From the NCBI RefSeq assembly GCF_021028975.2, contig NC_059432.1, positions 36,332,001-36,396,000 on the forward strand: DNA of 64,000 nucleotides. Reading direction: 5' to 3'. The translations under genes and the position numbers were made by a program. The notes below the pieces were generated by a model. The model was not told the DNA's origin. It worked only from the letters and a program-made list of their open reading frames with translations, and searched no databases. Positions 3,871 to 35,200 of this stretch are shown piece after piece (the stretch's first letter is position 1; every line of letters begins with the position of its first letter). The DNA comes from Sphaerodactylus townsendi (lineage: Eukaryota).

Positions 3871-5433
3871 TGTAACAGGGTCCCTTATATTCAAGGGCGA
3901 GGGAGAGATATTATCCCATCGTTGCCACCAAATGTAACAGGGTTTGATGCTCAGACTCCCTTTCTGGAGTCTGCCTCACTCCAACTCTCCCCAGAGGAAA
4001 AAAAATAAAGCCCCTGACAAAAATGGAGGGAAACTCTGTGAGAAAGTTTTGGCTTTTACACAGCCAGACACCACCCTATGTAGACACACAGGAAAATAGA
4101 CTGGAACTCTTTGGTAACGTGAAACAGAATTTGTAACGTTTATTTGGCTAGAAATGAAGGCTTCTCAGTAGACTTGAGAGGTTTTAAACGCTTGTTGGTT
4201 ACAGAAAGTAAAACTTATTTCCTGAGAGGTTATTCAGTCAGTTACATTAAAGTTTTCTGTTTGGTCACACGCAGGTGGCCACTATACTCCTTCTCTTAAA
4301 GAGGTTCTGGTTCTCAAGCTTTATCATACACACGGGCCGTTTCTGCACGGAGGCGGAAGCGGCTAGGTCGGCGCATTTTGCGCCGACCCGACAACACTGG
4401 GGACGGTCCTGGGAAGAGCTGGGATGCCGGCGCCGCGGAGCGCTGGCGCCCGGGCGACCCGGCGTGTCCCTGGGCCTCCGGCACGTCGCCAAGGCCTGGG
4501 GACACGGCCCCCCCCCGGCCCTGCGCGCCTGCTCCAGCGGCGCAGGGCAGGGGGGTGTGTCCCCAGGCCTCGGCGACGCGCCGGAGGCCCAGGCCCAAGG
4601 TAAGTGCTGGGAGGGAGTGGGGGGGGAGGCGTCTTGAAGCCGCTGCCGTTCGCTCGGCAGCGTCTTCAAGGCGGCATTTCCCCAACAAGTGCGCTTCCGA
4701 GCGCACTGGGGAAACGCCGGCTTCGCGGCGATCGGGCAGCGCGAGGGCGGCGCGGCTGCGATGCAACTGCGCCCCCTGTGCGAATGGCGGCCTGGAGACG
4801 GTGTTTTTGCTGTCTCCAGGCTGCCATTAAATGCCTGTGCAGAAACGGCCACAGGTTCTGATTTACTTCAGCTTTCTCTCACAGAGGTTTCAGCTTTTAG
4901 TTGTTACACACAGAGACACTAGATTTTCTCTGTTCCACACCCTTTCCAGTTCACATAACCACCCAAGTCTTGACTGGAAGGACTCGGCTCAACACTCACC
5001 ACCTTCCCTTTCAGTCCCCTGTTAAGGCCTAACTGCCCCCTTTATGGACTGGTCTTCTCCTGACTGGGTTTTGAACTGAGGTTGGACAGACATTAGTCTG
5101 GACAGCCAAGCTGCCAAGCACCTGAGCGGCGGATTCACCTTCCACCAAGCCCAGGGCTTTCCTTCACACTCCATCAAGCCTCCTCAGCCTGAATAGAGCA
5201 GTCTGACTTCTTGTCAGAATGCACAAGCAGCGACAGATCTCTCTCCCTGATCTGCACTCAGCTTTCTGGATCAGTCCAAGAGTGAAACAAGACAAAAGAA
5301 CCCTCAGCACTCAAGCTGCCTCCTTTTCTTTTCCTGGGCAATTTTCTCCAGCCAATCAGGACTGGGCAGGACTTAACTATTTCAGGGCAGTCTCTCCCTG
5401 AAAACCACTTCCCAAATATGGGCATTTGTCACA
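3871..5433 (-). mobile_element. Internally deleted LTR retroelement (Gypsy/ERV-like): ~1-kb LTR + PBS + tip of second LTR
   Basis: Minus-strand ends TGTGACA...TGTTACA. 5-bp TSD GCAGG at 3866-3870 and 5434-5438. PBS TGGTGGCAACGATGGGAT at 3930-3913, 2 nt after the LTR end at 3933. Minus-strand AATAAA at 4139-4144. Confidence 0.85.
4335..4850. mobile_element. GC/CpG-rich non-autonomous TIR element (PIF/Harbinger-like) nested in the LTR
   Basis: TIRs GGCCGTTTCTGCAC / GTGCAGAAACGGCC; 3-bp flanks ACG/ACA; related termini at 27213-27595 and 41517. Confidence 0.75.
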
Positions 5434-16873: not shown

Positions 16874-19800
16874 CTGTTAAACAAACAAATAGTAACAAGT
16901 CATTTTGAGTCAGAAGTCAAAAGTCTTGTCTGTTATTGTATAGATTATTAAAATGATTTAGGTTACTAGCACTTTCTAGAAAAAAAATTAATACCACAGA
17001 TTCACCGACACACATCCCAATGTTCTGGCATTGCATTGTGTATGCACAGAGGTCATGTGTCCCCAGGGTAGTATGTAATAACAACTTTGTGGAGGAAGGA
17101 ATTGTCTGAAGGCGAATGTTTATCCAACTATTTCAAACAATACCAGTTCCAAGGCTGTCACTTTGTTTCTTCAATTTTTTTTTCCAAGAACAAAACAAGA
17201 AAATCAGCTAGACGGTTGTCCTTTGTCTACTTCAACCGGGAGGGTAAGTTCTTTCCTTCTGGTGAGTTTTTCTTCACCAAAATTGACATTCTACTGATTC
17301 TTCTAAGTGAGAGTCTCCGTCTTGCAGTATAAGTGTGAGTTTCTGTCTTCACTAGCTTTGCCATCATTAATAAATAATAGTAATGATATCTTGGTCAGTG
17401 GTAAACAGAAACGGGGTAGGCCAATGACTCACTGGTTGGAAACCATTAAGAGGGACATGGGCCTGAACATCAACCAATTGAAAGAAGTTGTGGCAAACAG
17501 GGAAGAATGGAGGCAACTGGTTTACAGAGTATCCAAGAGTCGGACACTACTAAACCGATAAAGAAGAGAAGAGGGAATGATACCTTGTGGTTTGATAACA
17601 GGATTGAGATGACATAACTGCAGGTCTTCAGGAATGTAGGTTTCAGTTATCCAACTAATTTGAATTAAAAACATCCCCAATTTCTGAAACTTTAGGGCAG
17701 TTCTATTCTGAAGTATTCCCACAACCCTTCCCCTGTTGATCAGTCCCCGTCCTTGCAAAGGGGAACATTATATCAGGGATAAAATATCACCAGACCAGAA
17801 TCTTTTATGACCACTCCCTTAAATATACATATATTAATGGGGACTGCAGGGCTTGTCCACTGACTTCCTGAGGAGCTCACTCCAAATCTGGCTATAACCT
17901 GGATAAGGAACCTCATCAGGCTGAAAAATGATACTGCACACAAGAGATCATTCCCAGAGCTGAACTGCGTACAGAGAAGACTTTCAAACACAGCAGCTGT
18001 GTGAAATTATATATACTTTTGTCATTATATCGGCAAGTCTTTTAAATCCTTGGGCCTGCGTCCAGGTTAAATCTGGGGTTGGAAGCAAGAAACAACCCCT
18101 TAGTTTGTGGTCTGGGCTACAGTTTGTGAAAAAAGAAGAAAATGCCACAAAACTGGCATTTTCTTTTACATTCAGGTTCAAAAACAAGCATACAAGCATA
18201 CAAAAACAAGCATACAATTGGCCATGCTGGAAGGGGCTGATGGGAATTGTAGTCCATGAACTTCTGGAGAGCCTCAGGTTGCAGACCCCTGGTCTAAACA
18301 GCTAAATGAAAATAGAGAAGGAATATCAATCTACACCAGGGGTGTCCAACTCTGGCACTTCAGATGTTAATGGACTACAATTTCCATCAGCCCCTGCTTA
18401 TGGAAATTGTAGTCCATTAACATCTGAAGTGCCAGAGTTGGACACCCCTGGTCTACGTTTTTTAATGATTTTATGGCAATGGAATTCTAATCTCTGAAAC
18501 CTCCAGATTGTTAACTTGATTGCCCAGCGGTCTGGAGAAATGGGCAGCTGAAGCTCTTCATGGTATGGAGGTAACTAATACCCAATTAAGTTTCTATTAA
18601 AGGGGAGTGGTATTTTATTTCTCCGTGCAATTGGAAACCCTAATTGCCAAAGACGGAACACTGATAAAAATGCACATTGTTAATACTTAGTTCCTCAAAT
18701 ACTACAATGCTCAAGGATGGTATTTTCCAAGGTGACTAGTAAAGGCACAAATTATCTTTAGTTCACTGAATTGTTGGTTTTTCTCTAACTGGACATTTTC
18801 ATAATCTAAAACATAAATTTCTGTTCATGTTTCAATTAAACAGCAGATTATGTCAATGGACAACTAAGGAGGATAGGATTGTATCTGAGTGAATGACAGG
18901 TTTCTAAAGAAAGATTCCTGGCCTACAATTATCAACCCAAGTACCTACTGTGATATCTGTCAGTCAATCAGGCCTAAAAAGGGCACCTTAAATGAAATAA
19001 ACTGTATCTTTTCCTACCAGTTCCAGTGAGACATTTACATTGTAGAGCAACATTCTAACCAACAAAAGCAAGTCCGCCAACTTTAGTCTCATACTTACAT
19101 TCACACTGTATGACATCTAAATTAAACTGCTGAATCGCCCCCATGCTTATTTGTTTTAACTCATTATCCAGCAGCATCTGCATCAGGGAGGTTGAAAGAT
19201 GCTGGCAAGCGGACATGCAAGCAGTCTGTGCCACTTTCCCCTATCAAGAAAGGTAACAAGAATAAACAAGTACATAGGATCAGAATGTGTCATTGTTACC
19301 TACACTTACTAAGTTAAATGCAAAAAAAAATTGTTTTGAATGTTCCTATTACCAGCAATTAGTTTTGGTTTAGAACACAGCTTCCAAAGCAGTTGAACTT
19401 TAAAAAGTTTAGAAGGCTGTAACCCTGTTTCATATTGCACTATTAAACCTTTAAACCAATACCCAAACCCTTCTAAACAGCACAAATACAAAAGGTATCA
19501 TAAATACGTGTTATTTGTTACATTTGTAAATATGGCGCAAAAGCAATTTAAACTGACACATTACATACTTCAACGTCACAGAGCAGAAAACACATGCTTA
19601 TGGATTATCAACAACATGGACATTCTGAAACACTACATTCTACCTTCATATATTGGAACAATTCTACTACTTTTTGCCACTTCGATTTGAATCTATAAAC
19701 TTCTCTATTATCTGAGAGAACCACTCTAAAAATCACATTTTCCAAGTCATATGTAGCCCTCTGCTGTTCAAAATTCACTTACATGTCAATTACTATATTT

Positions 19801-22800
19801 TCACGTAATTTGTAATAGCAGTCAGTGTGAGTGATTATTCTAAAAACAGATCAAAGCCAGCTGTGAACATGCTAACATGCCAACCTGGGAACTGACTCCA
19901 CATTTACTCAGAAGTAAGTCCTATCATGTTCAAAAAGATTTAATCCAAGTAAGCATCCATACAACTGATACCTTAGGATCACTGCTCATTAATTCAAATT
20001 TAATTTGAACGAGAGATTTCTTTTGTAGCCAGATCTGATATTTTTGTAACAAGTTACCATTTCAAAGGAAACACATTAGAAAAAAGATGTTGCCATTAAT
20101 GCAGCTAATTCAAGAGTTAGAGCATTATAGCTGTTTTTATTTAGAAATAACATCTATTTAGAAATAACAATGGTATATATTCTTTGATACAATAAATATT
20201 AAACTTCAAAAGGAGAGGAAGGACTGTGCCAAAGGAGAGCAGATCCCAATATTCATTACATATGAAAGTTGCTGGGTACTTTTTGCAGGCAACACATTTT
20301 GCCCTCAACTGTGTTCAATTAAACCAGGGGCCTGCAACCTGTGGCTCTCCAGATGTTCATGAACTACAATTCCCATCAGCCCCTGCCAGCATGGCCAATT
20401 GGTCATGCTGGCAGGGGCTGATGGGAATTGTAGTTTATGAACATCAGGAGAGCCGCAGGTTGCAGACCCCTGAATTAAACCAAACATATTTACAGTCAGT
20501 CAGTACTACAGTCAGTACTACAAAATTCCTCCTGGTCCCCCCCTCCCCTCCAATGTCTACCTTGTATGTTGCAATATGTTCACATTTGTGAAAGGAAGTT
20601 CCATAGACCTATCTGATTAATGGGTATCTTGTAACAAAATTTTAAAAACTGTTCTGAAGCCAATGCATTTGACAGGAACAGAACAAGTGTCAACAAATAA
20701 GGCAAGAAACAAAGCACAGCCAGCATGCTCAGATGTCTCCCAAACCCACTGGTAATTACACTGGGAGACAGGCAAGGATATTCGCCAAACAGAACAATAT
20801 CAATATGAATGGGGAAAAGAAAGGAAAGAGGGAAGCGGGGAGGGGGGGAGAGAAGGGAGAACAAATCAATTAACTTAATTCAATTATAACGTAGCAGATT
20901 TAAGACACTTAATGGAAATGTCATTTTGATTTAATGGAACAACTGCATTTTGGTTTCATGCAGTGCTTCATCAAATCAGCTCCGTGTCCTATTTTTTGTG
21001 CCACTGTAATGTAATAACAGTAAGCAGATTAATTGAGTTCCCAAGATCAAAATGTTTTAAACGTCCAATTCCATCCCACATGTAAACATGTCGTAGACAG
21101 CACTGCTGTGCAATATTCCCTTTCACCTTATTCACCAAACCTATGCGTTCAAGCAGTTTAAAGCTGGCATATCAATAGGTCTGGAGCAAAAAGTAATGAT
21201 TACAACAGAGTCAATATGAAAGTGAATTTATCTGCCTCCTTTTGTTAGTTTTCATTCAAATACTTTACACGTTTGTTATAAGTGATTGTACAAATGCCGA
21301 CACCCTAAAATTCAACACAACTGCTTTCAACTATGCACTCCGACTGCAGGCTGATTGCTGTCAGGGCTCAGTCAAAGAAAAGCAAAAGGAAGGGAAAGAA
21401 ACAGAATCGTTTAAAGTCTCTGGTTTACATTTTAGAGCAGGGCGAAGAAGCAAGTCTGAGCTTTAAACTGCACCTGAAATTGTTCTTATTAAGCTTACTG
21501 TTACCAAAAGCTTTTCAAAGACATCCTTAACAAAATATACGCTTTTCCAAGCTGAAAGTGTACAAAACCCAATTTGTGCTTCATGCGATACCCATTCAAA
21601 TTCACATTCATCAGTAAAGCGCTGTTTATAGTGAGTCAAACGGTTTGTTACCACTGCTTCCTGTTTCTCTTAAATACATTTTTTTCAAGGGTGTGTAAGA
21701 ACACAACGATCATCTGTTAAAACAGTGAATTAAAATTGTTCTGCTGTTTCTAAAACCCTCTTTCACTATTGGCTAGCGCCAGAATACTGTTTAACTACAT
21801 CAGTTAAACATCAATTAAACTGGGTAAAACCAGTTTTGTTAAATTCGTCTGAAGTACTTTACACCTACTAACAATTTTTGCCTTCGTTTGTCAAATTAAA
21901 CGCATCCATTCCAATACACGTATTTTGTATTCCAACTCGGCAAAGCTGAAGAAATAAGGATTCTTTTATACATATATAAAAAGGAACACCTGCTAGGAGT
22001 TAGGCATCTACATTTTACCCACCCTTCCACATTTGCTGAAATACAAGTTTGCAAAAAGAGAAAACCCTTAGACAAACTTCTTATATTTCAAAGGAGTTTG
22101 CAAAAGAGAATCTGCTGACATGTTAAATCCTTTCTGTAGTATCCAAAAGCTTTTCTCTTAAGAACAATTGCTGTAAAGAGACGTTTGGCTCCTAGGAAAT
22201 TCCCAAAGGGTCAGCCATATGCATCCTTCCACGGCACCTTCACGGTGCAGCTTTCTAGACCCATGCTAGCTGTCTCAAAAGCAGCTTTCNNNNNNNNNNN
22301 NNNNNNNNNNNNNNNNNNNNNNNNNNNNNNNNNNNNNNNNNNNNNNNNNNNNNNNNNNNNNNNNNNNNNNNNNNNNNNNNNNNNNNNNNNNNNNNNNNNN
22401 NNNNNNNNNNNNNNNNNNNNNNNNNNNNNNNNNNNNNNNNNNNNNNNNNNNNNNNNNNNNNNNNNNNNNNNNNNNNNNNNNNNNNGGCTGTGCCAATCAA
22501 GGACAGCATGAGACGGCATTTGGAAGAATCAGTAAGAAACCTCTTTCTTTAAGTAGCCTACGTGGGCTTTTGATTGACAGCTTCTGAATATCGCTTGCGG
22601 AACACTACCGCCTTTTATCCAATAGTTCCTCACTGCAAGCTGTGAAATACGGCTTTTACTGCCAATCACAGGAACAATAAGACAGCCCCCCAAGCAAACA
22701 GGAAACAACAAAAGTTGTCTGTTAGATTCAAAAGTCTAGTTTTATAATTGAACAATACTGAAGCATGAATTAAGTAGGTTTTATTTTAATACATTCAGTC

Positions 22801-25800: not shown

Positions 25801-28800
25801 CATGTATATTCTTAAGTACATGAATTTTATTTAGTCCTTCAAGTAACATATGTGCTCCCGTACATAATTTGGCACAATATAGAACCAGTTTGACTTCCAG
25901 ATACTTTTTACATTCTGTTTTTATTTTTCTGTTGAAGCTCTGATTTCCTAAAATGCTCTATTGTATGAAACATGGCTATCAGGTGAAAAACATGCTGCGT
26001 GCAAATGAAAATTCTAAAATGAGAGAGTTTTCCCAACCCAGTTTTCCCAAAAGCCAGGAATTCTATTTTAAAAGCAGCAATTTATTTATTATAATGCAAA
26101 TATTTGTGTTGGACTAAAGTAAACTTCTTAAAATAAGTTGATGACCTGAAAATAATTGGGGCATGAATCCTTTAAAGCAATCCATCATCTTTTTTTAAGA
26201 CATACATTTGGGTGCAGACATTCTCCTAACTTCAAAAAGTATGTTTTTGAAAGAGGCTAGGAAACTTTCACCAGCTCTTTATTCTCAGCCACTATTTGTC
26301 CATTTTAACCCTATTTCGTATGCAGATCTCATAGCTGCATTTTGACACCTGACCTCACATCCAAGAGGTCTTATGTCTTCTTTGAATGATCTCATTTCAG
26401 ATGCAATGCATGCCCTATCATGTTTCTATGAGCCTTTAAAAGGTTCCTTCTGCCTTGATGTCCAAAAGACCAAGGTTAGTCTTCAACTTGGATTCTGCAT
26501 GCAGCTACACAACTTAGCAGCGAGTGTTGATCAAATCGAAAAGAGTACTTTTAATAATTCACTCCGTACTGAAGCAATAAGCCTGCAGGCAGTTCATAGT
26601 TTAAGTTTTCCACGTGCATGCTTTTTTCTAGCACTTGCGTCTACTTACCGACATAGCTGCATGGTCATTGTTGTTATTCTGAGAAGGAAACCAGTCAGGC
26701 AATCAAAACAAAACAAAAATTAAAAAGCACTGTCAATATCAAACAGCATTGGGGGAGCAATCAGAAAGGGAATGTGGTCTTAAGAAAACAAGCAATAAGC
26801 CTGCCAATTAGCTTTACTTCCAAAATCCTGAGTGGTGAAAGTTACACTTATATTAAGAACAAAATTCACTTTTTCCAGCTTACGGACATAAGGTTCTTGA
26901 GACAGAGTACCAAGATAAAATCATGCAACAAAACAGTCAAAATAAAAATAAATCCAATGTGCCTTAATGCAACAGAAAGCTTTGGTAAAGTGAAACAGAA
27001 CTTCTGTTTGAAGTTACAAACCAACCAGATACACATTTTAAAGGATTAACTGATATCAATTCTCCTGTAAGTCATAATAACAAAGCACAGTACTAGTGAA
27101 AGAGTCAGGAGAATAGCTTATTCTACATAAGCAGTATGTCTCCAAAGTCATTCTGAAAACACTTAGCAGAAGAATTATTAGAAAAGGTTTTGGATCAAGT
27201 GCAATTAACATAGGCCGGTGATCCGCAGCCCCGCAGAAATGTGACGGTTACGCAGCAGTCGCGATGGACAGCGTGACTGCCCTGATGTCCTGCCCGTCCC
27301 CATCTGTCAGTGCCTCCCCTCCCAGCTACTGTCAGGCCCAGTGCATGGGTCTGGGAAAGGTGCTTGGCCATGCAGGGAAAGCACCAGGGACGAGCGATAA
27401 TGTGTGTGTGTGGGGGAAAAGGTGACCCAGGCGTCTGGCAGTCGCCAAAAGAGTGGTTTTGCTGCTGAATAATGGCCGCCTTCGCTACCGTTTACGCTTC
27501 ACGACGGGCGAATAAAGACTGCGCTATACGTAACGCCTCGCTTATGGCTCTTTACCGTTGCCACGACGTCATATTTCGCCCGTGCGGAAACGGCCATAGT
27601 AATTCCAAATACTATGAATGGGACTCAACATACTGTGGGTAGTCTTCCACTCATGCATATAGATATAAGCTCCCGCTTTCTAGCTGAAAGGTCTCTCAAC
27701 CAACCAACCCCCCCCCACACACACACACACACACACACAGAGGAAGGTTCTTCCAGAGTGGTTCTCCATGCAGAATTGGGAGACGGGTATTCTGTTTTCA
27801 TGTATATGCAGAGACACTTTTATTTCACACACAGGGAATGGAAGGGGGGCAGGGAATTGGATCCTGGCCATTATCATTAGCCAGTTATTTAGTTCCTTTG
27901 TTGAAAATCCATGTGTGAATTTTTTGTATCTATTCAAGTTACAGCAAGTATTATCTACAAAAATATTAACACTAAATTGATTAGAGCAGTTCTTTTTTTA
28001 AAAAAGCTAGATGTTGCCTCTGTCATATGTTTACACTGAAGTTCTTATCAACTGATGAACCTAACAAACAATGCACAAAACAAACATTTCTGGGAAGAAA
28101 CACACGACAGGAAAACTGTTGGTACCACAGTAGTTAAGAGGAGTCTTATACCTTTATTAGAAAAGCTCATACAACACAGCTATGTAATTAAATGTGGGTG
28201 TTCTTTGTGGCTTAATATATATATACTTGTCTTCCACAGAACACTAAGGAACAGAAACGTTTTTGAAGTTACATCATATAAACTACACAGAAAGTGAACA
28301 TTTGTGGGTAAACACAGAAACCACATACTACAAATACTGCTTCTTCGACTGACTCTCTTTGACTTTTCATCTTACTCAAGTGACAAAATTGCTGCACATT
28401 TTAAAAGACACAGATGTAACATGTGAAAAGTGTGAAAAGTCCCCCTGCTGTCTTACAGCAAAATTCTGCTTTATGGTTAAACTGACTCTTTTCTGAAATA
28501 AGAATATGTGGTGGAAAGTGCTGTTATGCCACAGCTAACTTACAGCAACCCTACAGGGTTTTCAAGGCTAGAACCGTTCAAAGGTGGTTTGCCACTGCCT
28601 GCCTCTGTGTAACAATACTGGGCTTCCTTGGTGGTCTCCCATCCAACTATGGCCAACTTTGCTTAGCTTCCAAGATGTGACGAGAGTGAGCGATACCCAT
28701 TCCTCACTGAAAGATGACTATGCGGTCGTGATTCCTTCAGCGGAAGTTAAATGTGTACGCAACCCCGTGTCAGAGAAGTGCAGCTTCTCTTTTTAGATTA

Positions 28801-29156
28801 AAGCATCGTATTTAAGCACTGGCTTCGTCAAAAAGGTCCTTGGCATTGTTAAACATAGCACTTTGATAAAAGAGCATTTATATTGATCTGTTTTCATATA
28901 GTTGGGTCTGCCATTTTGTAGGCTCTGTGCTGCCATGGGTAACAAAACGGCAGGAGCAACTGTATAAAAATGAAAGTGTTGCTGGAACAATCTGGAACAA
29001 TCTAAATGCTCTTTTATCAAAGTGCTATGTTTAACAATGCCAAAGATAATGTTTTTGATGAAGCCAATGCTTCAATATGATTCTTTAATCTAAAAAAAGA
29101 ATCAGATGAGGCGGGGGGGGGGTGAAGGAAGGAGGGCACAATGACCCCACAAAACA

Positions 29157-29227
<71 letters not shown>

Positions 29228-32200
29228 GCATTTAATAGACCGCCCTATCCCCGAAGGGCTCAGGGTGGTGTACAGTAAAACCAATAGAAAACAATAAGAC
29301 ATAGTGTGCAAAGGCAAAAGTGCATTAAAATCCATTAAAACAGTAGCAACATCACACTTAATTAGCCGATTTTAAAAGAGGCGTCCGAATCACAAACACT
29401 GCATTGCAGCTAAAGGAAGATCCAGGAAGATTAATGGTGAATTAATGGTGGTTTAATCCTGGCATCTTTCCATGAGAAAGGGCGTAGACTGGGCCATCCA
29501 GGTCAAGGCACACTAATAATACAGCCAACCTCAAACAAAACTGACTAGGGAAGTGTCAAACCTACTACAGCAGTCAAAATTTGGTAAACATTTCCCCCCT
29601 ATAGTCAGAAGGCCTGGGAACTTGAGGTTCAATTCTTAACATGTTTGCTGGAAGTGAATATTTCATTATTCCCAGTGCAACATAATTTTAAATGTGTGAT
29701 TAGAATTTGGTGGCTTTAAAAGGAACATTGTGCTGAGAGTATGCTTGGCACAGAACAGTATGTGATGCTAGTACTTTTGCTTTCTGGCAGACTTTAATGT
29801 TAAGGCTAAATTTCAAGTTGTTACTCTTCCTATAATTTATACACAAAGATGGCTAACTACATCAAGAATAGATGAAAGCCTGTAGTGCATGCTGCCATAG
29901 CCAAATCTATCCTGAAAGCAGATGACAACAAATGATAAATTATCTATTGTACAACACAAGATGCTTTCAGGTTTCTAGCCAGTGCTTTTAAAGGCTATGT
30001 CCTCAGTCTTATTTTTATCCCCAGGATATTGAGCAGACTTTGGGTTCTCTGTCTGCCCACAGGGGCAATTCTGAGTCTTGGATCACATCAAAGGCTGAGC
30101 TTTGAACTGCATTAATATAGCAACTATTCTTCATAGAAAATGTATATACCATCCTAAGTGCTAGAAGAAAGTGTCAAGTACACTAGAATATTACAGCCAT
30201 AGTTAATCAGGAAATATAAATACACAGGGCCTGGTCTGACAGAGGGAAGAATTAACTGAATTTCTTCCCAGCAGCATGTCGAGTTTCTTCTCTACTTTTT
30301 GATGGGTGGGTTTTATGGTATTGTACCCCACTGGGGTTCCTGTCCTCCCCAGGCTCTGTCCCCAAACCTCCATGAGTTTTCCAGCCTGGATTTGGCTACC
30401 CTCCCCCCCACCCCCACCATTCCCTGTAAGTGGCTGAGGGCACCCAGCAATACAATAGTTACCAGATGGAGGGCTTTCCCCCCCCCCATCACTGTCACAA
30501 AGGAAGGAGGACATGAGAAGATAGCAGGTAGTTGAAAAAAAGAGAACAATTCCAAAGCGAGAGAAGCCATAAGTTAGAGATGGCCTACAACTAGTGGTGG
30601 GATTCAGCAGGTTCGCACCACTTTGGCAGAACCAGTTGTTAAAATGCCTCTTGGGAACAACCTCTTGTTAAATTATTTAAATCCCACCACCGGAACCAGT
30701 TGTTAAATTATTTGAATCCCACCACTGCGACCCACTTTCAGAGGTTTCACAAACCCTTTTGGGTCCAGAGCCACAGGCTGGGAAACATTGCTCTAATCTG
30801 TCCTGTAGTATTTTTTAAGTGTCACTGTAATTGCCTAAGGAGTGTTGGAAGAGTTCAGGCTAATTGTAAGCTGGGCATCTGCCAGTACTTGCAGAAATTG
30901 TTATGACCCAGGGATAGATGCTGGTTTCCCAAAGCAATTTTCTTCAGGTTTCTCTTTTTCCTTCAATCCCAGTCACTTCTGCGGATACAGGATATTTCCT
31001 AATTTGCACACACACACAAAGCTGCTTTTGATGGAAACCTCCTTAACTTACCCACCAAGCTCCAAACACTAAACTTCCAGCTGTTCCCATCAGCCCATGT
31101 TCTGCTCTTCTCAGAACAAAGACAACACACACAGAGACAGAGTTTTGCAAGCTTCTCCATGCTTTGAGCACATTCAGAGCTTGATCTGCATTTGATGGAT
31201 GGAAACCAGACTGGCGGGGCGGGGGGGGAATGGAAAACTCAGATTTTGCACCAGGCTACATTTTCCCTAGATACGCCTCTGATTGTAAATGGGATGCCAC
31301 CAGTTCAGACTGCTACTTGGGGGAATTATATCTTTAATGTTCTAATCTAGACCAGCGGTTCTCAACATGTGGGTCGGGACCCCTTTGGGGGTCGAATGAC
31401 CCTTTCACAGGGGTTGTCTAAGACTCTCTGCATCAGTGTTCTCCATCTGTTAAATGGATAAATGTTAGGGTTGGGGGTCACCACAACATGAGGAACTGTA
31501 TTAAAGGGTTGCGGAATTAGGAAGGTTGAGAACCACTGTTCTAGACAAAAGCCATAGTCTACACCAGGCTAACACTTTTTGGGAATCAGAACTGTGCAAA
31601 TAACAAACATTTATTTAGATCAGTCTAGCTCTCCAGGGATGCAACAGATCCCAAGATCTTTTCTCATGTTGTCCTCCGTACTAGCACTCTCTTCTGGCCT
31701 CAGAATAGTTTAACCCCAGCACTGCCATGCCTGCCTAGAGTAAAAGCACATGGACTGGGAGATTTCAGTGGGGAGGGGAAGTGGGAGGAATCCCTTTCTC
31801 CCCCTCCCACTTCTATTAGCAGAGCTACAGTGATAAAAACACCAGAAAGGACCATTTTGACCTCTGCCCCCTCCCCAAACTGCAGCTATATGGGTAGAAA
31901 GGACTGCTGGGCCAAGAGAAAAAGGGGGTCCGTGGCATGGCCAGTCTTTCTAATGATGAACTGCTGGATCCAGCCCATGGTCCCTGTGTGATTTACTGTG
32001 TGATTACAGCACTGCGAAACTTACTTACACCACTATGATGTTTCTAGAGCAGAAAGCACAGGCTACGTCCTTTTGTTATTGTGATGGATTTACTTCTGAA
32101 AAAAACCCTCTCTTAAAGCAAACATATTTTTTGCATTTTTTATATAAAACAGAACTTATAATTTTTATTTAGACTACAGATGGAAAGGGTTTATACCTTG

Positions 32201-35200
32201 ATGAATGATTCACAAGGAAAACAGTAAATACACAGATCTGTTCCCTGCAGCACGTGTAATATAGCCAAAATGCTCCTCTTAGCACTACTGAGGCTAGGTG
32301 TGCAACTGCCAAGACTACTGCCCATTTATTTTGTTCTGACAACTTCAACTAAAAGCAGAAAACTATTAGTTTTTTTACATGGACTTAATGAATTTCTTAA
32401 TTTATAGCACGATACTATAGCCCTTTTCTGCACCTCTTCCAATTACATGAGATCACTTTTTTAAGGTGGGACTATCAGAACATTATCCAGTTTTTCAAGT
32501 ACGGCCATACAACAGGTGTATACAAGAGCATTACACTACCAGTATTATCAATCAATTTTCTAAGAATACCCAACAGAATTTGCCTTTTACCACCGCAACC
32601 TACTCAGTCAACATTTTACCTGACCTGTGTATCATGACCATGTTAGTCAACATTTTGCAGTTCGTATGTAAGGGCAGTTCGTATGTAAGGGCAGGATTTC
32701 TTGGCAAAAATGTGAATCACTGTATACATACTGAGCCCAATTGGCCACTTTAAATGTGGTGTGAGAATACACTGGACTGCAAATAATGTATAGATACTGA
32801 GCCTAAAAACATTTGGCAGTCACCAGAAAAGGTGTTGGCAGGACCCCTACTTTAGGACAACTCCACAGCTGTTTTAGTGTGGGAAGTAAGGACACAGCTA
32901 GTGTCACACAAACCAAGAATACATTCCTTATTGTTCAGTGGGAAGGACTCTTTCTCAGCAAGGTCAGAGATAACATATAAAGCATGGGTTTCAAACTTAT
33001 GGCCCTCCAGCTATTCATGGACTATATTTCCCATCAGCCCCTGCCAACATGGCCAATTGGCAGAGCTGATGAGAATCGTAGTCCATGAGCATCTGCAGGG
33101 CCATAGGTTAGAGATCCCTGAAGTAAAGTCTTCAATGTGAGCAAGCCCTGTGACAAAGGATAACAAAGTTGGGAGTTCTAGTTCTAAGCTGGAGGATTTT
33201 TTCTGGGGCTAAGGTCCCCACAACTGCCCTGGCCATGGCTGCATATGTAGCAATTCTCATCTAGCAAGGTATTAGGTTGCATTAAACTCATAGTGAAGAC
33301 ATATCCCTGGTGAATTAAATTGGTTGATATATTAAGCCTAGCACAAACAAGAGACAAAGGAAATTTAAGATCTGTGTTTTGTGCCACAGCATATTATATA
33401 ATTAAATATTTGTAACAAACCTCCAAAGTATTCCTTGCTCAAATCCTTCATTGTAGTACTACTTCATTGTAGTACTACTCAGAATTAACTCAAGTATTCT
33501 ACGTAAGACAAGAAAACAGACTACACTGTCACAGAGAATGGACATAATATTTGCTTTGAAAGCACCTTGGGGGAAATAGAAAAAGCTGTTACGTTGCAGC
33601 TGATTTATGGTAACTGTATAGGAGTTTCAAGGCAAGAGACAGAGGTGGTTTGTCGCTACCTGCCTCTGTAAGCACCTATATCTTAAATGAAGTAAACTTT
33701 AAATTTTGAATAAAGATCCAGCCAGACAAACTACCAACTACAATGTAAGAGACCATCCCTATGAACCTGAATGTTAAGGAGATCTAATCTACCCTTCAAG
33801 GTTTTAATACATACACACATATATTTCATGTGGGCTACTGCCACTGTCTATGGCAGTGGGTCTCAACCTGGGGGTCGGGACGCCTTTGGGGGTTGAACGA
33901 CTCTTTCATAGGGGTCGCCTAAGACTCTCTGCATCAGTGGTCTCCATCTGTAAAATGGATAAATGTTAGGGTTGGGAGTCACCACAACATGAGGAACTGT
34001 ATTAAAGGGTTGCGGCATTAGGAAGGTTGAAAACCACTGGTCTATGATCTGGATCTTGCTTATTCTCATTAATCTAAAGCAGTGGTTCTCAACCTGGGGG
34101 TCAGGACCTCTTTGGGGTTGGGAGTCACCACAAACATGGACCCCTTTGGGGTTGGGAGTCACCACAACATGAAGAACTGTATTAAAGGGTTGCGGCATTA
34201 GGAAGGTTGAGAACCACTGATCTAAAGTACTGAGGAAGCTATATAAAAGCTTACTCACAGAAGCTGTATTCTTCAAGAGCCAGGTTGCTTTCAATAGGTT
34301 AAAAGTATCCTGGAAATATTACCCTATCAGGAAGCAATCAGCATAATCAAGAACCTCTTCACACGGTTGGAAGCTTCAGAACTCTCTGTGTCCAAACACA
34401 GAGGTAACAAGTCCATTTCTTAGTCATGGTCAAAAAACTGGTAAAAGGCCAAGTGCTGAAAGACCTGTCCCTTGGTTTAAAAAAATCCTGTCCCCCTTTC
34501 TTATCATTGTTAAGATAGTATTATATCTGCATTAATGCTAATCAGTATAAGTTTTAAAACCAGGATTTCAAACTCTAGTTTGTAAATCCTAGTACAAGTT
34601 AATCCTGGTGAGTTTCTGTCCAGGTACATTACACACAGTTAACAATGTCAAAGGAAGAGACAGATTACAAGGGGGAGAAGTGTGATCCTGCAAATTTGTA
34701 GCTCACTCCTGTTCCCTTAACTAAAGATAAACAGGGTGGTTATTGCTTTTATCTGCTACATCAAATCATCCTTGCTTTGCACATACCCAGACAAATGAAT
34801 CTACGATCACCTACAGTACATACTTACAGGCAAGTGAGTAAACACCTGAAAGGTGCTTCTCAAGAAGTTAATCAGATCCATTAAATAGCCACTGGCTCTC
34901 CCGTCTGGTTCAGTCATTGACCAGTCATAATCAGCAAGCTGAATGAACTCATCAATCTTCTGGTTGAGCTTGGTATAAATCTCCCCTTCCGCAGCATGTC
35001 TTGCATCCTGAATGGAGAAAAAAGAGACGGTAAGCGTAGTTCAAAATGTTACTGACACAGAGATAATTCCTACAAACGTTAGGAAAGACTCCATTTGACC
35101 CAAGACAAGAAGAAGGAAAAACCCATTAATGATATTATGTGATCCATATTGTAATACATTGCTTGAAATTAGTCACAATACTATGATAAACAAATTTTAA

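What the first reader, a model, noticed from the sequence alone, without database searches (positions are those of the whole stretch)
26649..32043. Possible two-microexon combinatorial switch in the Sec15 C-terminal region
Both candidates lie in the same phase-0 intron, so four isoforms are possible: +0, +5, +10 or +15 aa (FTHLP-KHHSG-NNNNDHAAMS-GKVAQ). They carry different regulatory signatures (UGC versus GCAUG), so they might be controlled independently. Established: the Drosophila Sec15 C-terminal helical domain binds Rab11, and microexons are enriched in vesicle-trafficking genes where they alter interaction surfaces. Inference: a polar, His/Asn-rich loop insert tuning exocyst-Rab interaction by cell type.
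Basis: inference. Interest (0 to 1): 0.85.

Follow-up and report, generated by a model that had tools for sequence, protein, structure and literature searches.

The report
One real EXOC6 microexon, one decoy
Only one of the two proposed tiny exons in this gecko EXOC6 (Sec15) gene holds up: the 30-base one is an ancient, already annotated alternative exon that lengthens a surface loop, while the 15-base one has no support and is probably a chance look-alike.

Summary
Both candidates are in the sequence as described, on the minus strand, between the exon ending FTHLP (34828) and the exon starting GKVAQ (19240).

**The 30-nt exon is real but not new.**
- NNNNDHAAMS (26678-26649) is already in both RefSeq isoforms of Sphaerodactylus townsendi EXOC6, whose exons match the window 100%.
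- The same or a near-identical peptide sits at this junction in 116 of 118 top EXOC6 hits, from ray-finned fish to birds and one marsupial; the other two carry it in broken models.
- Many species have annotated isoform pairs with and without it.
- It is 30/30 nt identical in gecko, wall lizard and chicken, inside a 762-nt conserved block.
- GCAUG motifs sit at conserved positions downstream.
- An AlphaFold model places it in a disordered loop between two helices of the Sec15 C-terminal domain.

**The 15-nt exon is unsupported.**
- KHHSG (32043-32029) appears in none of about 460 Sec15-family proteins fetched.
- Its surroundings show no conservation with Podarcis or chicken.
- Shuffles give about 0.3 equally good decoys per 64 kb.

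RNA reads could not be obtained. The four-isoform switch is therefore not supported; a two-state (+0/+10 aa) cassette exon is.

The parts
34828..35007 (-). Constitutive EXOC6 exon (60 codons, DARHAAEGE...VFTHLP), ends in phase 0. It is the 5' flank of the interval.
   Evidence: It is 100% identical to residues 596-655 of XP_048361930.1 (P0404), and 89.5% nt identical to Podarcis.
32029..32043 (-). Candidate A: a 15-nt in-frame pseudo-exon or candidate microexon (KHHSG) with an AG acceptor, a GTAAGTAAG donor, and UGC at -15 and -8. No support for its use.
   Evidence: for the anatomy. Absent from all fetched proteins. No conservation. Chance expectation. Not part of a repeat within the window.
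26649..26678 (-). Exon B: an annotated, deeply conserved 30-nt cassette microexon of EXOC6 encoding NNNNDHAAMS (residues 656-665 of S. townsendi isoform X1).
   Evidence: It is 30/30 nt identical in Podarcis and chicken and 27/30 in a fish contig.
26071..26821 (-). Conserved intronic block that encloses exon B, about 140 nt upstream and about 580 nt downstream.
   Evidence: 86.7% identity over 762 nt to Podarcis. 70% over 672 nt to chicken. Alignment A1.
26617..26621 (-). GCAUG motif 28 nt downstream of exon B's donor. Further copies lie at 26502-26498 (UGCAUG, +146/147) and 26413-26409 (+236).
   Evidence: The same offsets are seen in Podarcis (+26, +146, +234) and chicken (+27, +141), and one copy at +67 in the fish. 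Background is 0.38 per 300 nt.
19099..19240 (-). Constitutive EXOC6 exon (GKVAQTACMSACQHL...IQCE plus 1 nt). It is the 3' flank of the interval.
   Evidence: 100% identical to P0404 residues 666-712.

Best explanation
The interval holds one real regulated exon and one probable decoy.

Exon B (26678-26649, 30 nt, NNNNDHAAMS) is an ancient vertebrate cassette microexon of EXOC6 (Sec15A). It is already annotated in this species, which is very probably Sphaerodactylus townsendi.

**Shown**
- Exon B's sequence, its splice sites and about 750 nt of surrounding intron are under strong constraint.
- Isoforms with and without it are annotated in many sauropsids.
- It adds 10 polar residues to a predicted disordered loop between two helices (residues 635-651 and 663-688 of isoform X1) in the C-terminal helical domain. 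That domain aligns to the Rab11-binding Drosophila Sec15 fragment.

**Inferred**
- Inclusion is promoted by RBFOX-family proteins binding the conserved downstream (U)GCAUG motifs. That would make it most used in neurons and/or muscle.
- The longer loop would tune a partner contact of Sec15 (Rab11/Rab8/Rabin8 or a neighbouring exocyst subunit) rather than the fold.

Candidate A (32043-32029, KHHSG) is most likely a chance pseudo-exon: good splice-site look-alikes in unconstrained intron. The gene therefore makes two forms at this junction (+0 and +10 aa), not four.
For: **Species and gene**
- All window exons match XP_048361930.1 (S. townsendi EXOC6 X1) at 100% inside exon bounds.
- Both RefSeq isoforms, X1 and X2, contain NNNNDHAAMS and neither contains KHHSG.

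**Breadth of exon B**
- 116 of 118 top EXOC6 hits carry the 10-aa insert or a variant differing by 1-2 residues exactly between FTHLP and GKVAQ. The other two carry the same peptide after FTHLP in broken models.
- These span fish, amphibians, turtles, squamates, birds and one marsupial.

**Alternative use**
- Members of the same clusters lack the insert in the same species.

**DNA constraint**
- Exon B is 30/30 nt identical across gecko, Podarcis and chicken, with conserved flanks.
- GCAUG offsets are conserved.

**Structure**
- phmmer against 2A2F (E = 9e-83) places the insert in an alignment gap.
- In the AF2 model (mean pLDDT 82.8) residues 657-664 have pLDDT below 50 and lie in coil between two confident helices.

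**Against candidate A**
- No KHHSG, and no other extra insert at this junction, in about 460 fetched proteins.
- Local alignment of the exon A region to the Podarcis intron scores 22, against a shuffle mean of 21.7.
- No BLAST hit near A in Podarcis or chicken.
- Decoy expectation is 0.32 per 64 kb.
Against: - Absence of A rests on annotation and non-conservation only.
- Annotation pipelines often miss 15-nt exons.
- A has features typical of SRRM3/4-dependent microexons: two UGC close to the acceptor and a very strong donor. It lies in the same interval as a real microexon, where the strict-criteria chance expectation is only 0.06 (criteria chosen post hoc).
- No other gecko genome could be compared, so a gecko-specific exon is not excluded.
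- In this species only B-containing isoforms are annotated, so skipping of B here is inferred from other species.
- RBFOX dependence, tissue pattern and any effect on Rab binding are all untested.
Confidence: 0.8

Rival explanations
1. Both exons are real and combine. A would be a young, gecko- or Sphaerodactylus-specific, SRRM3/4-dependent 15-nt microexon used in a few cell types, missed by annotation. It would give +5 and +15 aa forms alongside the ancient B.
For: - A has an acceptor with a 76% pyrimidine tract, UGC at -15 and -8, a GTAAGTAAG donor, and is in frame without a stop.
- Under strict criteria only A and B qualify on the sense strand of the whole window, and none on the antisense strand.
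- Shuffles give 0.06 per intron.
- Very short exons are often missed by gene predictors (general knowledge).
Against: - No protein with KHHSG or any 5-aa or 15-aa insert at this junction was fetched. This includes species with 10 or more annotated EXOC6 isoforms.
- There is no sequence conservation around A in Podarcis or chicken, whereas B sits in a 762-nt conserved block.
- Known neural microexons are typically deeply conserved (general knowledge).
- The criteria were tuned to A after seeing it.
- 0.32 such decoys are expected per 64 kb on one strand, and the scan reads very many windows.
Confidence: 0.07
2. B is effectively constitutive in this gecko, always included, so there is no switch at all in this species. 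The +0 forms annotated elsewhere would be minor or lineage-specific.
For: Both S. townsendi RefSeq isoforms (823 and 822 aa) contain B.
Against: - +0 and +10 pairs are annotated in another gecko (Eublepharis X2 versus X3), and in lacertids, Anolis, Sceloporus, snakes and birds.
- Long ultraconserved flanking intron with conserved GCAUG motifs is the usual mark of regulated rather than constitutive exons (general knowledge).
- A species with only two annotated isoforms probably had limited RNA data.
Confidence: 0.12

Closest known systems
Annotated EXOC6 isoforms containing NNNNDHAAMS, e.g. XP_048361930.1 and XP_048361931.1 (S. townsendi), XP_028585614.1 (Podarcis muralis X1), XP_025007365.1 (Gallus gallus X1)
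   Same: Exon B is this exon. It has the same peptide, the same position between FTHLP and GKVAQ, and identical nucleotides and splice sites in Podarcis and chicken.
   Different: Nothing differs for B. Candidate A has no counterpart in any of these models.
RBFOX-activated conserved neuronal/muscle cassette exons with downstream (U)GCAUG
   Same: Short frame-preserving exon, long conserved flanking intron, and GCAUG motifs at conserved offsets within 250 nt downstream of the donor.
   Different: RBFOX binding, RBFOX dependence and tissue specificity were not tested here. No paper in the searched library describes this exon.
SRRM3/SRRM4 (eMIC)-dependent neural microexons
   Same: Candidate A is 15 nt and in frame, with UGC motifs just upstream of the acceptor and a strong donor.
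   Different: No conservation and no transcript or annotation evidence. Typical members are conserved across vertebrates.
Drosophila Sec15 C-terminal domain (PDB 2A2F), the Rab11-binding fragment
   Same: Residues 414-744 of the gecko protein align to it at E = 9e-83. The microexon maps inside this domain.
   Different: The fly protein has no residues at the insert position (an alignment gap between ...FAFKLP and HIAQAAC...). Whether the vertebrate loop touches a Rab is unknown.

Membership tests
Vertebrate EXOC6 (Sec15A) gene | Exons encode a protein with Sec15 N- and C-terminal domains, orthologous to named EXOC6 rather than EXOC6B | tested here: met
   - Window exons are 100% identical to XP_048361930.1, 'exocyst complex component 6 isoform X1 [Sphaerodactylus townsendi]'.
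- PF20651 and PF04091 are recorded for these proteins.
- EXOC6B hits are only about 70-74% identical.
Conserved alternative cassette microexon (exon B) | Very short exon (30 nt or less), a multiple of 3, with canonical splice sites | tested here: met
   30 nt, AG...GTAAGT, in frame. It is above the strict 3-27 nt cut-off used by some authors.
Conserved alternative cassette microexon (exon B) | Both inclusion and skipping isoforms exist | tested here: inconclusive
   Annotated +10 and +0 pairs exist in the same species for many sauropsids, including the gecko Eublepharis. In S. townsendi only inclusion isoforms are annotated, and no reads were available.
Conserved alternative cassette microexon (exon B) | Conservation of the exon and flanking intron across distant species | tested here: met
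   - 30/30 nt identical in gecko, Podarcis and chicken.
- 762-nt block at 86.7% identity to Podarcis, and 672 nt at 70% to chicken.
- The peptide is conserved down to ray-finned fish.
RBFOX-regulated exon (exon B) | (U)GCAUG within about 300 nt downstream of the donor, conserved | tested here: met
   Offsets are +28/+147/+236 in the gecko, +26/+146/+234 in Podarcis, +27/+141 in chicken and +67 in the fish. Background is 0.38 per 300 nt.
RBFOX-regulated exon (exon B) | Inclusion depends on RBFOX proteins; tissue-restricted inclusion | not testable with these tools
   No reads were available, and no paper was found.
SRRM3/4-dependent microexon (candidate A) | UGC motifs close upstream of the acceptor, plus a strong donor | tested here: met
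   UGC at -15 and -8, donor GTAAGTAAG. The background rate of TGC is 0.63 per 40 nt, so this is weak evidence.
SRRM3/4-dependent microexon (candidate A) | Exon is present in transcripts or annotated isoforms | tested here: not met
   No KHHSG or other extra insert in about 460 fetched Sec15-family proteins, including both isoforms of this species. Direct reads were not obtainable.
SRRM3/4-dependent microexon (candidate A) | Evolutionary conservation of the exon and flanks | tested here: not met
   No BLAST hit in the orthologous Podarcis or chicken intron. The Smith-Waterman score equals that of shuffles. Other geckos were not available.

The most novel reading that the evidence does not exclude
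Candidate A is a young, gecko-lineage microexon, used in rare neuronal cell types and missed by annotation. It would have arisen in the same loop-coding junction as the ancient exon B, so that EXOC6 in this lineage makes +0/+5/+10/+15 aa loop variants.
Probability: 0.07. Interest if true: 0.45.

Novelty: already known. Interest (0 to 1): 0.2.

Why it matters
The real part of the finding is already in public annotation, so little changes. Exon B is nonetheless a striking case:
- Its 30 nt have stayed identical between gecko, lizard and chicken, synonymous sites included.
- It sits in about 750 nt of conserved intron.
- It lengthens a loop in the Rab-binding half of an exocyst subunit.
- No paper in the searched library describes it.

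A functional study comparing the +10 and +0 forms in ciliogenesis or polarised exocytosis would be new biology. The case also shows that good splice-site look-alikes with UGC motifs occur by chance and need RNA or conservation support.

Tried and rejected
**Searches that did not help**
-, the search for homologous proteins with the 47-aa downstream exon, the representatives search with the 60-aa upstream exon. Both returned almost only genomic read-through ORF fragments (FTHLP followed by VS..., i.e. intron), which are useless for isoforms.
-, a search with a Laticauda protein. It turned out to be EXOC6B: 118 of 118 EXOC6B hits show no insert at the junction. The query had no insert, so insert-bearing forms would rank lower. 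This is weak evidence that EXOC6B lacks an equivalent exon.
- I first took the gene for EXOC6B from memory. Named hits showed it is EXOC6.

**RNA reads**
- Only local scripts read it.

**Orthologous loci that could not be fetched**
- Anolis, Tiliqua and Terrapene: gene range over 100 kb.
- Heteronotia X2: not on record.
- No second gecko could therefore be compared.

**Other checks**
- Exon A as part of a repeat or transposon: no other copy in the window.
- Literature searches for an EXOC6 or EXOC6B microexon found only unrelated circRNA papers.

**Steps not taken**
The public protein P0404 served in its place.
Full report
**1. What is in the sequence**

The window carries most of a Sec15-family gene on the minus strand. 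Its exons can be followed from 63446 down to 16797.

The finding's interval lies between two constitutive exons:
- Exon 35007-34828 has 60 codons and ends ...VFTHLP|gtaagt in phase 0.
- Exon 19240-19099 starts ...cttgatag|GGGAAAGTGGCACAG, encoding GKVAQ.

- A is 32043-32029: ctgctctag|AAACATCATAGTGGT|gtaagtaag, encoding KHHSG.
- B is 26678-26649: ccttctcag|AATAACAACAATGACCATGCAGCTATGTCG|gtaagtaga, encoding NNNNDHAAMS.
- A has UGC at -15 and -8. B has GCAUG at +28, +147 and +236.

So the observation as such is correct.

**2. Which gene and which genome**

- Named hits for the flanking exons are EXOC6, not EXOC6B.
- All window exons match XP_048361930.1 at 100% within exon bounds. That protein is exocyst complex component 6 isoform X1 of the gecko Sphaerodactylus townsendi, 823 aa (P0404).
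- The window is therefore that genome or a very near relative.
The public protein P0404 was used instead.

**3. Exon B is real, old and already annotated**

*How it was found.* A Chelonia mydas EXOC6 model (P0166) turned up by accident. It carries FTHLP-NNNNDHAAMS followed by a duplicated exon.

*Breadth.* Searching with that junction gave 903 hits.
- In 116 of the 118 listed besides the query itself, the insert between FTHLP and GKVAQ is a 10-aa peptide.
- It is NNNNDHAAMS in 82 of them. The rest differ by one or two residues: NNNNDHASMS, SNNNDHAAMS, NNNNDYAAMS, NNTNDHAAMS, SNTNDHAAMS, NNNNDHGSMS.
- The remaining two carry NNNNDHAAMS after FTHLP in broken models.
- Hits come from Polypterus, sturgeons, gar, bowfin, teleosts, salamanders, a caecilian, turtles, squamates, birds and a marsupial.

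*In this species.* Both RefSeq isoforms of S. townsendi (X1 823 aa, X2 822 aa) contain it at residues 656-665.

*Alternative use.* Cluster members show +10 and +0 forms side by side in Lacerta agilis, Podarcis muralis, Anolis carolinensis and A. sagrei, Sceloporus, the gecko Eublepharis, and birds. It is therefore a cassette exon in sauropsids.

*DNA-level constraint.*
- The exon and its splice sites are identical, 30/30 nt, in the gecko, Podarcis muralis (L003) and chicken (L004). The match is 27/30 in a fish contig (L001).
- It sits in a block of 762 nt at 86.7% identity to Podarcis, and 672 nt at 70% to chicken.
- Identity at synonymous sites and in the flanks points to constraint on the RNA, as is usual for regulated exons (general knowledge).
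- The downstream GCAUG motifs keep their offsets: +28/+147/+236 in the gecko, +26/+146/+234 in Podarcis, +27/+141 in chicken and +67 in the fish. Background is 0.38 per 300 nt.
- This fits RBFOX-type enhancement from the downstream intron. That is an inference from the established position rule for RBFOX, not a test.

**4. Where the insert sits in the protein**

- phmmer of P0404 against the PDB finds the Drosophila Sec15 C-terminal domain (2A2F, E = 9e-83, residues 414-744).
- The ten residues fall in an alignment gap between fly ...FAFKLP and HIAQAAC....
- An AlphaFold2 model of P0404 was built with a 107-sequence alignment (mean pLDDT 82.8, pTM 0.65).
- It has confident helices at 635-651 and 663-688, with coil between them. 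pLDDT is below 50 at 657-664.
- The exon therefore lengthens a flexible surface loop in the C-terminal half, the region reported to bind Rab11. The supporting citations, Zhang 2004 and Wu 2005, were seen only in the reference list of PMC3747259.
- I could not measure the distance from this loop to the Rab-binding helix, because model coordinates are not exposed.
- From memory, Wu et al. found that the C subdomain binds Rab mainly through one helix. Whether the loop touches it is open.

**5. Candidate A has no support**

- None of about 460 Sec15-family proteins fetched contains KHHSG or any other extra residues at this junction. This includes both isoforms of this species and species with ten or more annotated EXOC6 isoforms.
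- BLAST of the whole interval against the orthologous Podarcis and chicken introns gives no hit within 5 kb of A, apart from a dispersed repeat about 1 kb upstream (window 33120-32992). Several other intronic blocks align well.
- A Smith-Waterman comparison of 121 nt around A with the Podarcis intron scores 22, against 21.7 ± 2.5 for shuffles.
- Podarcis has no in-frame AG...GTRAGT candidate there other than B and a 9-nt DQI.
- A is not part of a repeat in the window.

*How surprising is A by chance?*
- Criteria fitted to it after the fact give 0.06 per intron and 0.32 per 64 kb in dinucleotide shuffles.
- Slightly looser criteria (at least 60% pyrimidines) give 1.6 per 64 kb, against 4 observed.
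- The same intron holds three other in-frame AG...GTRAGT pseudo-exons with weaker tracts.
- Across a scan of many windows, one such site next to a real microexon is not remarkable.

*What keeps A alive.* It has a good SRRM4-like signature, 15-nt exons are easily missed by annotation, no other gecko could be compared, and no reads could be examined.

**6. RNA evidence**

- The absence of A and the skipping of B in this species remain untested at the read level.

**7. Verdict**

- The combinatorial four-isoform switch is not supported.
- What is there is a known, deeply conserved two-state cassette microexon in EXOC6 (+0/+10 aa). It has conserved downstream GCAUG motifs and lengthens a disordered loop of the Rab-binding domain.
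- Beside it is a 15-nt splice-site look-alike that is probably a decoy. I put the chance that A is real at about 7%.
- Novelty: already known, at the level of annotation.
- The exon's function appears unstudied. Nothing was found in the searched library.

Noticed in passing
window 26730-26679 (minus strand), just upstream of exon B: A conserved upstream acceptor, GA(T/C)(A/G)TTGACAG|, lies 51 nt before exon B. Using it would read CFLIFVLF then a stop. Several bird EXOC6 isoforms are annotated as ending FTHLP-YILNFLF* or YILIFLF*, and in chicken that peptide maps to exactly this spot. It may be a conserved truncating or NMD-type alternative 3' splice site.
   Followed up: partly
window 22787-21921 (interrupted by the N run 22290-22485) and 21403-20645: Conserved non-coding blocks lie in the intron between exon B and the GKVAQ exon. 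They are 82-87% identical to Podarcis and up to 88% over 281 nt to chicken, as conserved as the exons, but all three frames have stops. They may be enhancers or splicing-regulatory elements. The N run was left untouched.
   Followed up: partly
window about 26790-26776 and 26585-26570 (minus strand): A 14-nt direct repeat, GCAGGCTTATTGCTT, flanks exon B about 100 nt upstream and about 65 nt downstream. The downstream copy is conserved in Podarcis and chicken, and partly in the fish.
   Followed up: no
window 4268-4867 (GC about 50%) and cluster of P0308: A GC-rich island sits near the 3' end of the window. Two lacertid 'cytochrome P450 26C1 isoform X1' models (631 aa) cluster with EXOC6 at 90% identity. 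This suggests read-through or fusion gene models between EXOC6 and its neighbour CYP26C1.
   Followed up: no
P0166 (Chelonia mydas EXOC6, 807 aa): This public gene model repeats the 60-aa DARHAAE...FTHLP exon after the microexon. It is likely an assembly or model artefact.
   Followed up: no
window 37330-37295 (minus strand): A third in-frame AG...GTAAGT pseudo-exon (36 nt, SLCSSILKSSYR, pyrimidine tract at least 70%) lies in the preceding intron. It was not examined further.
   Followed up: no
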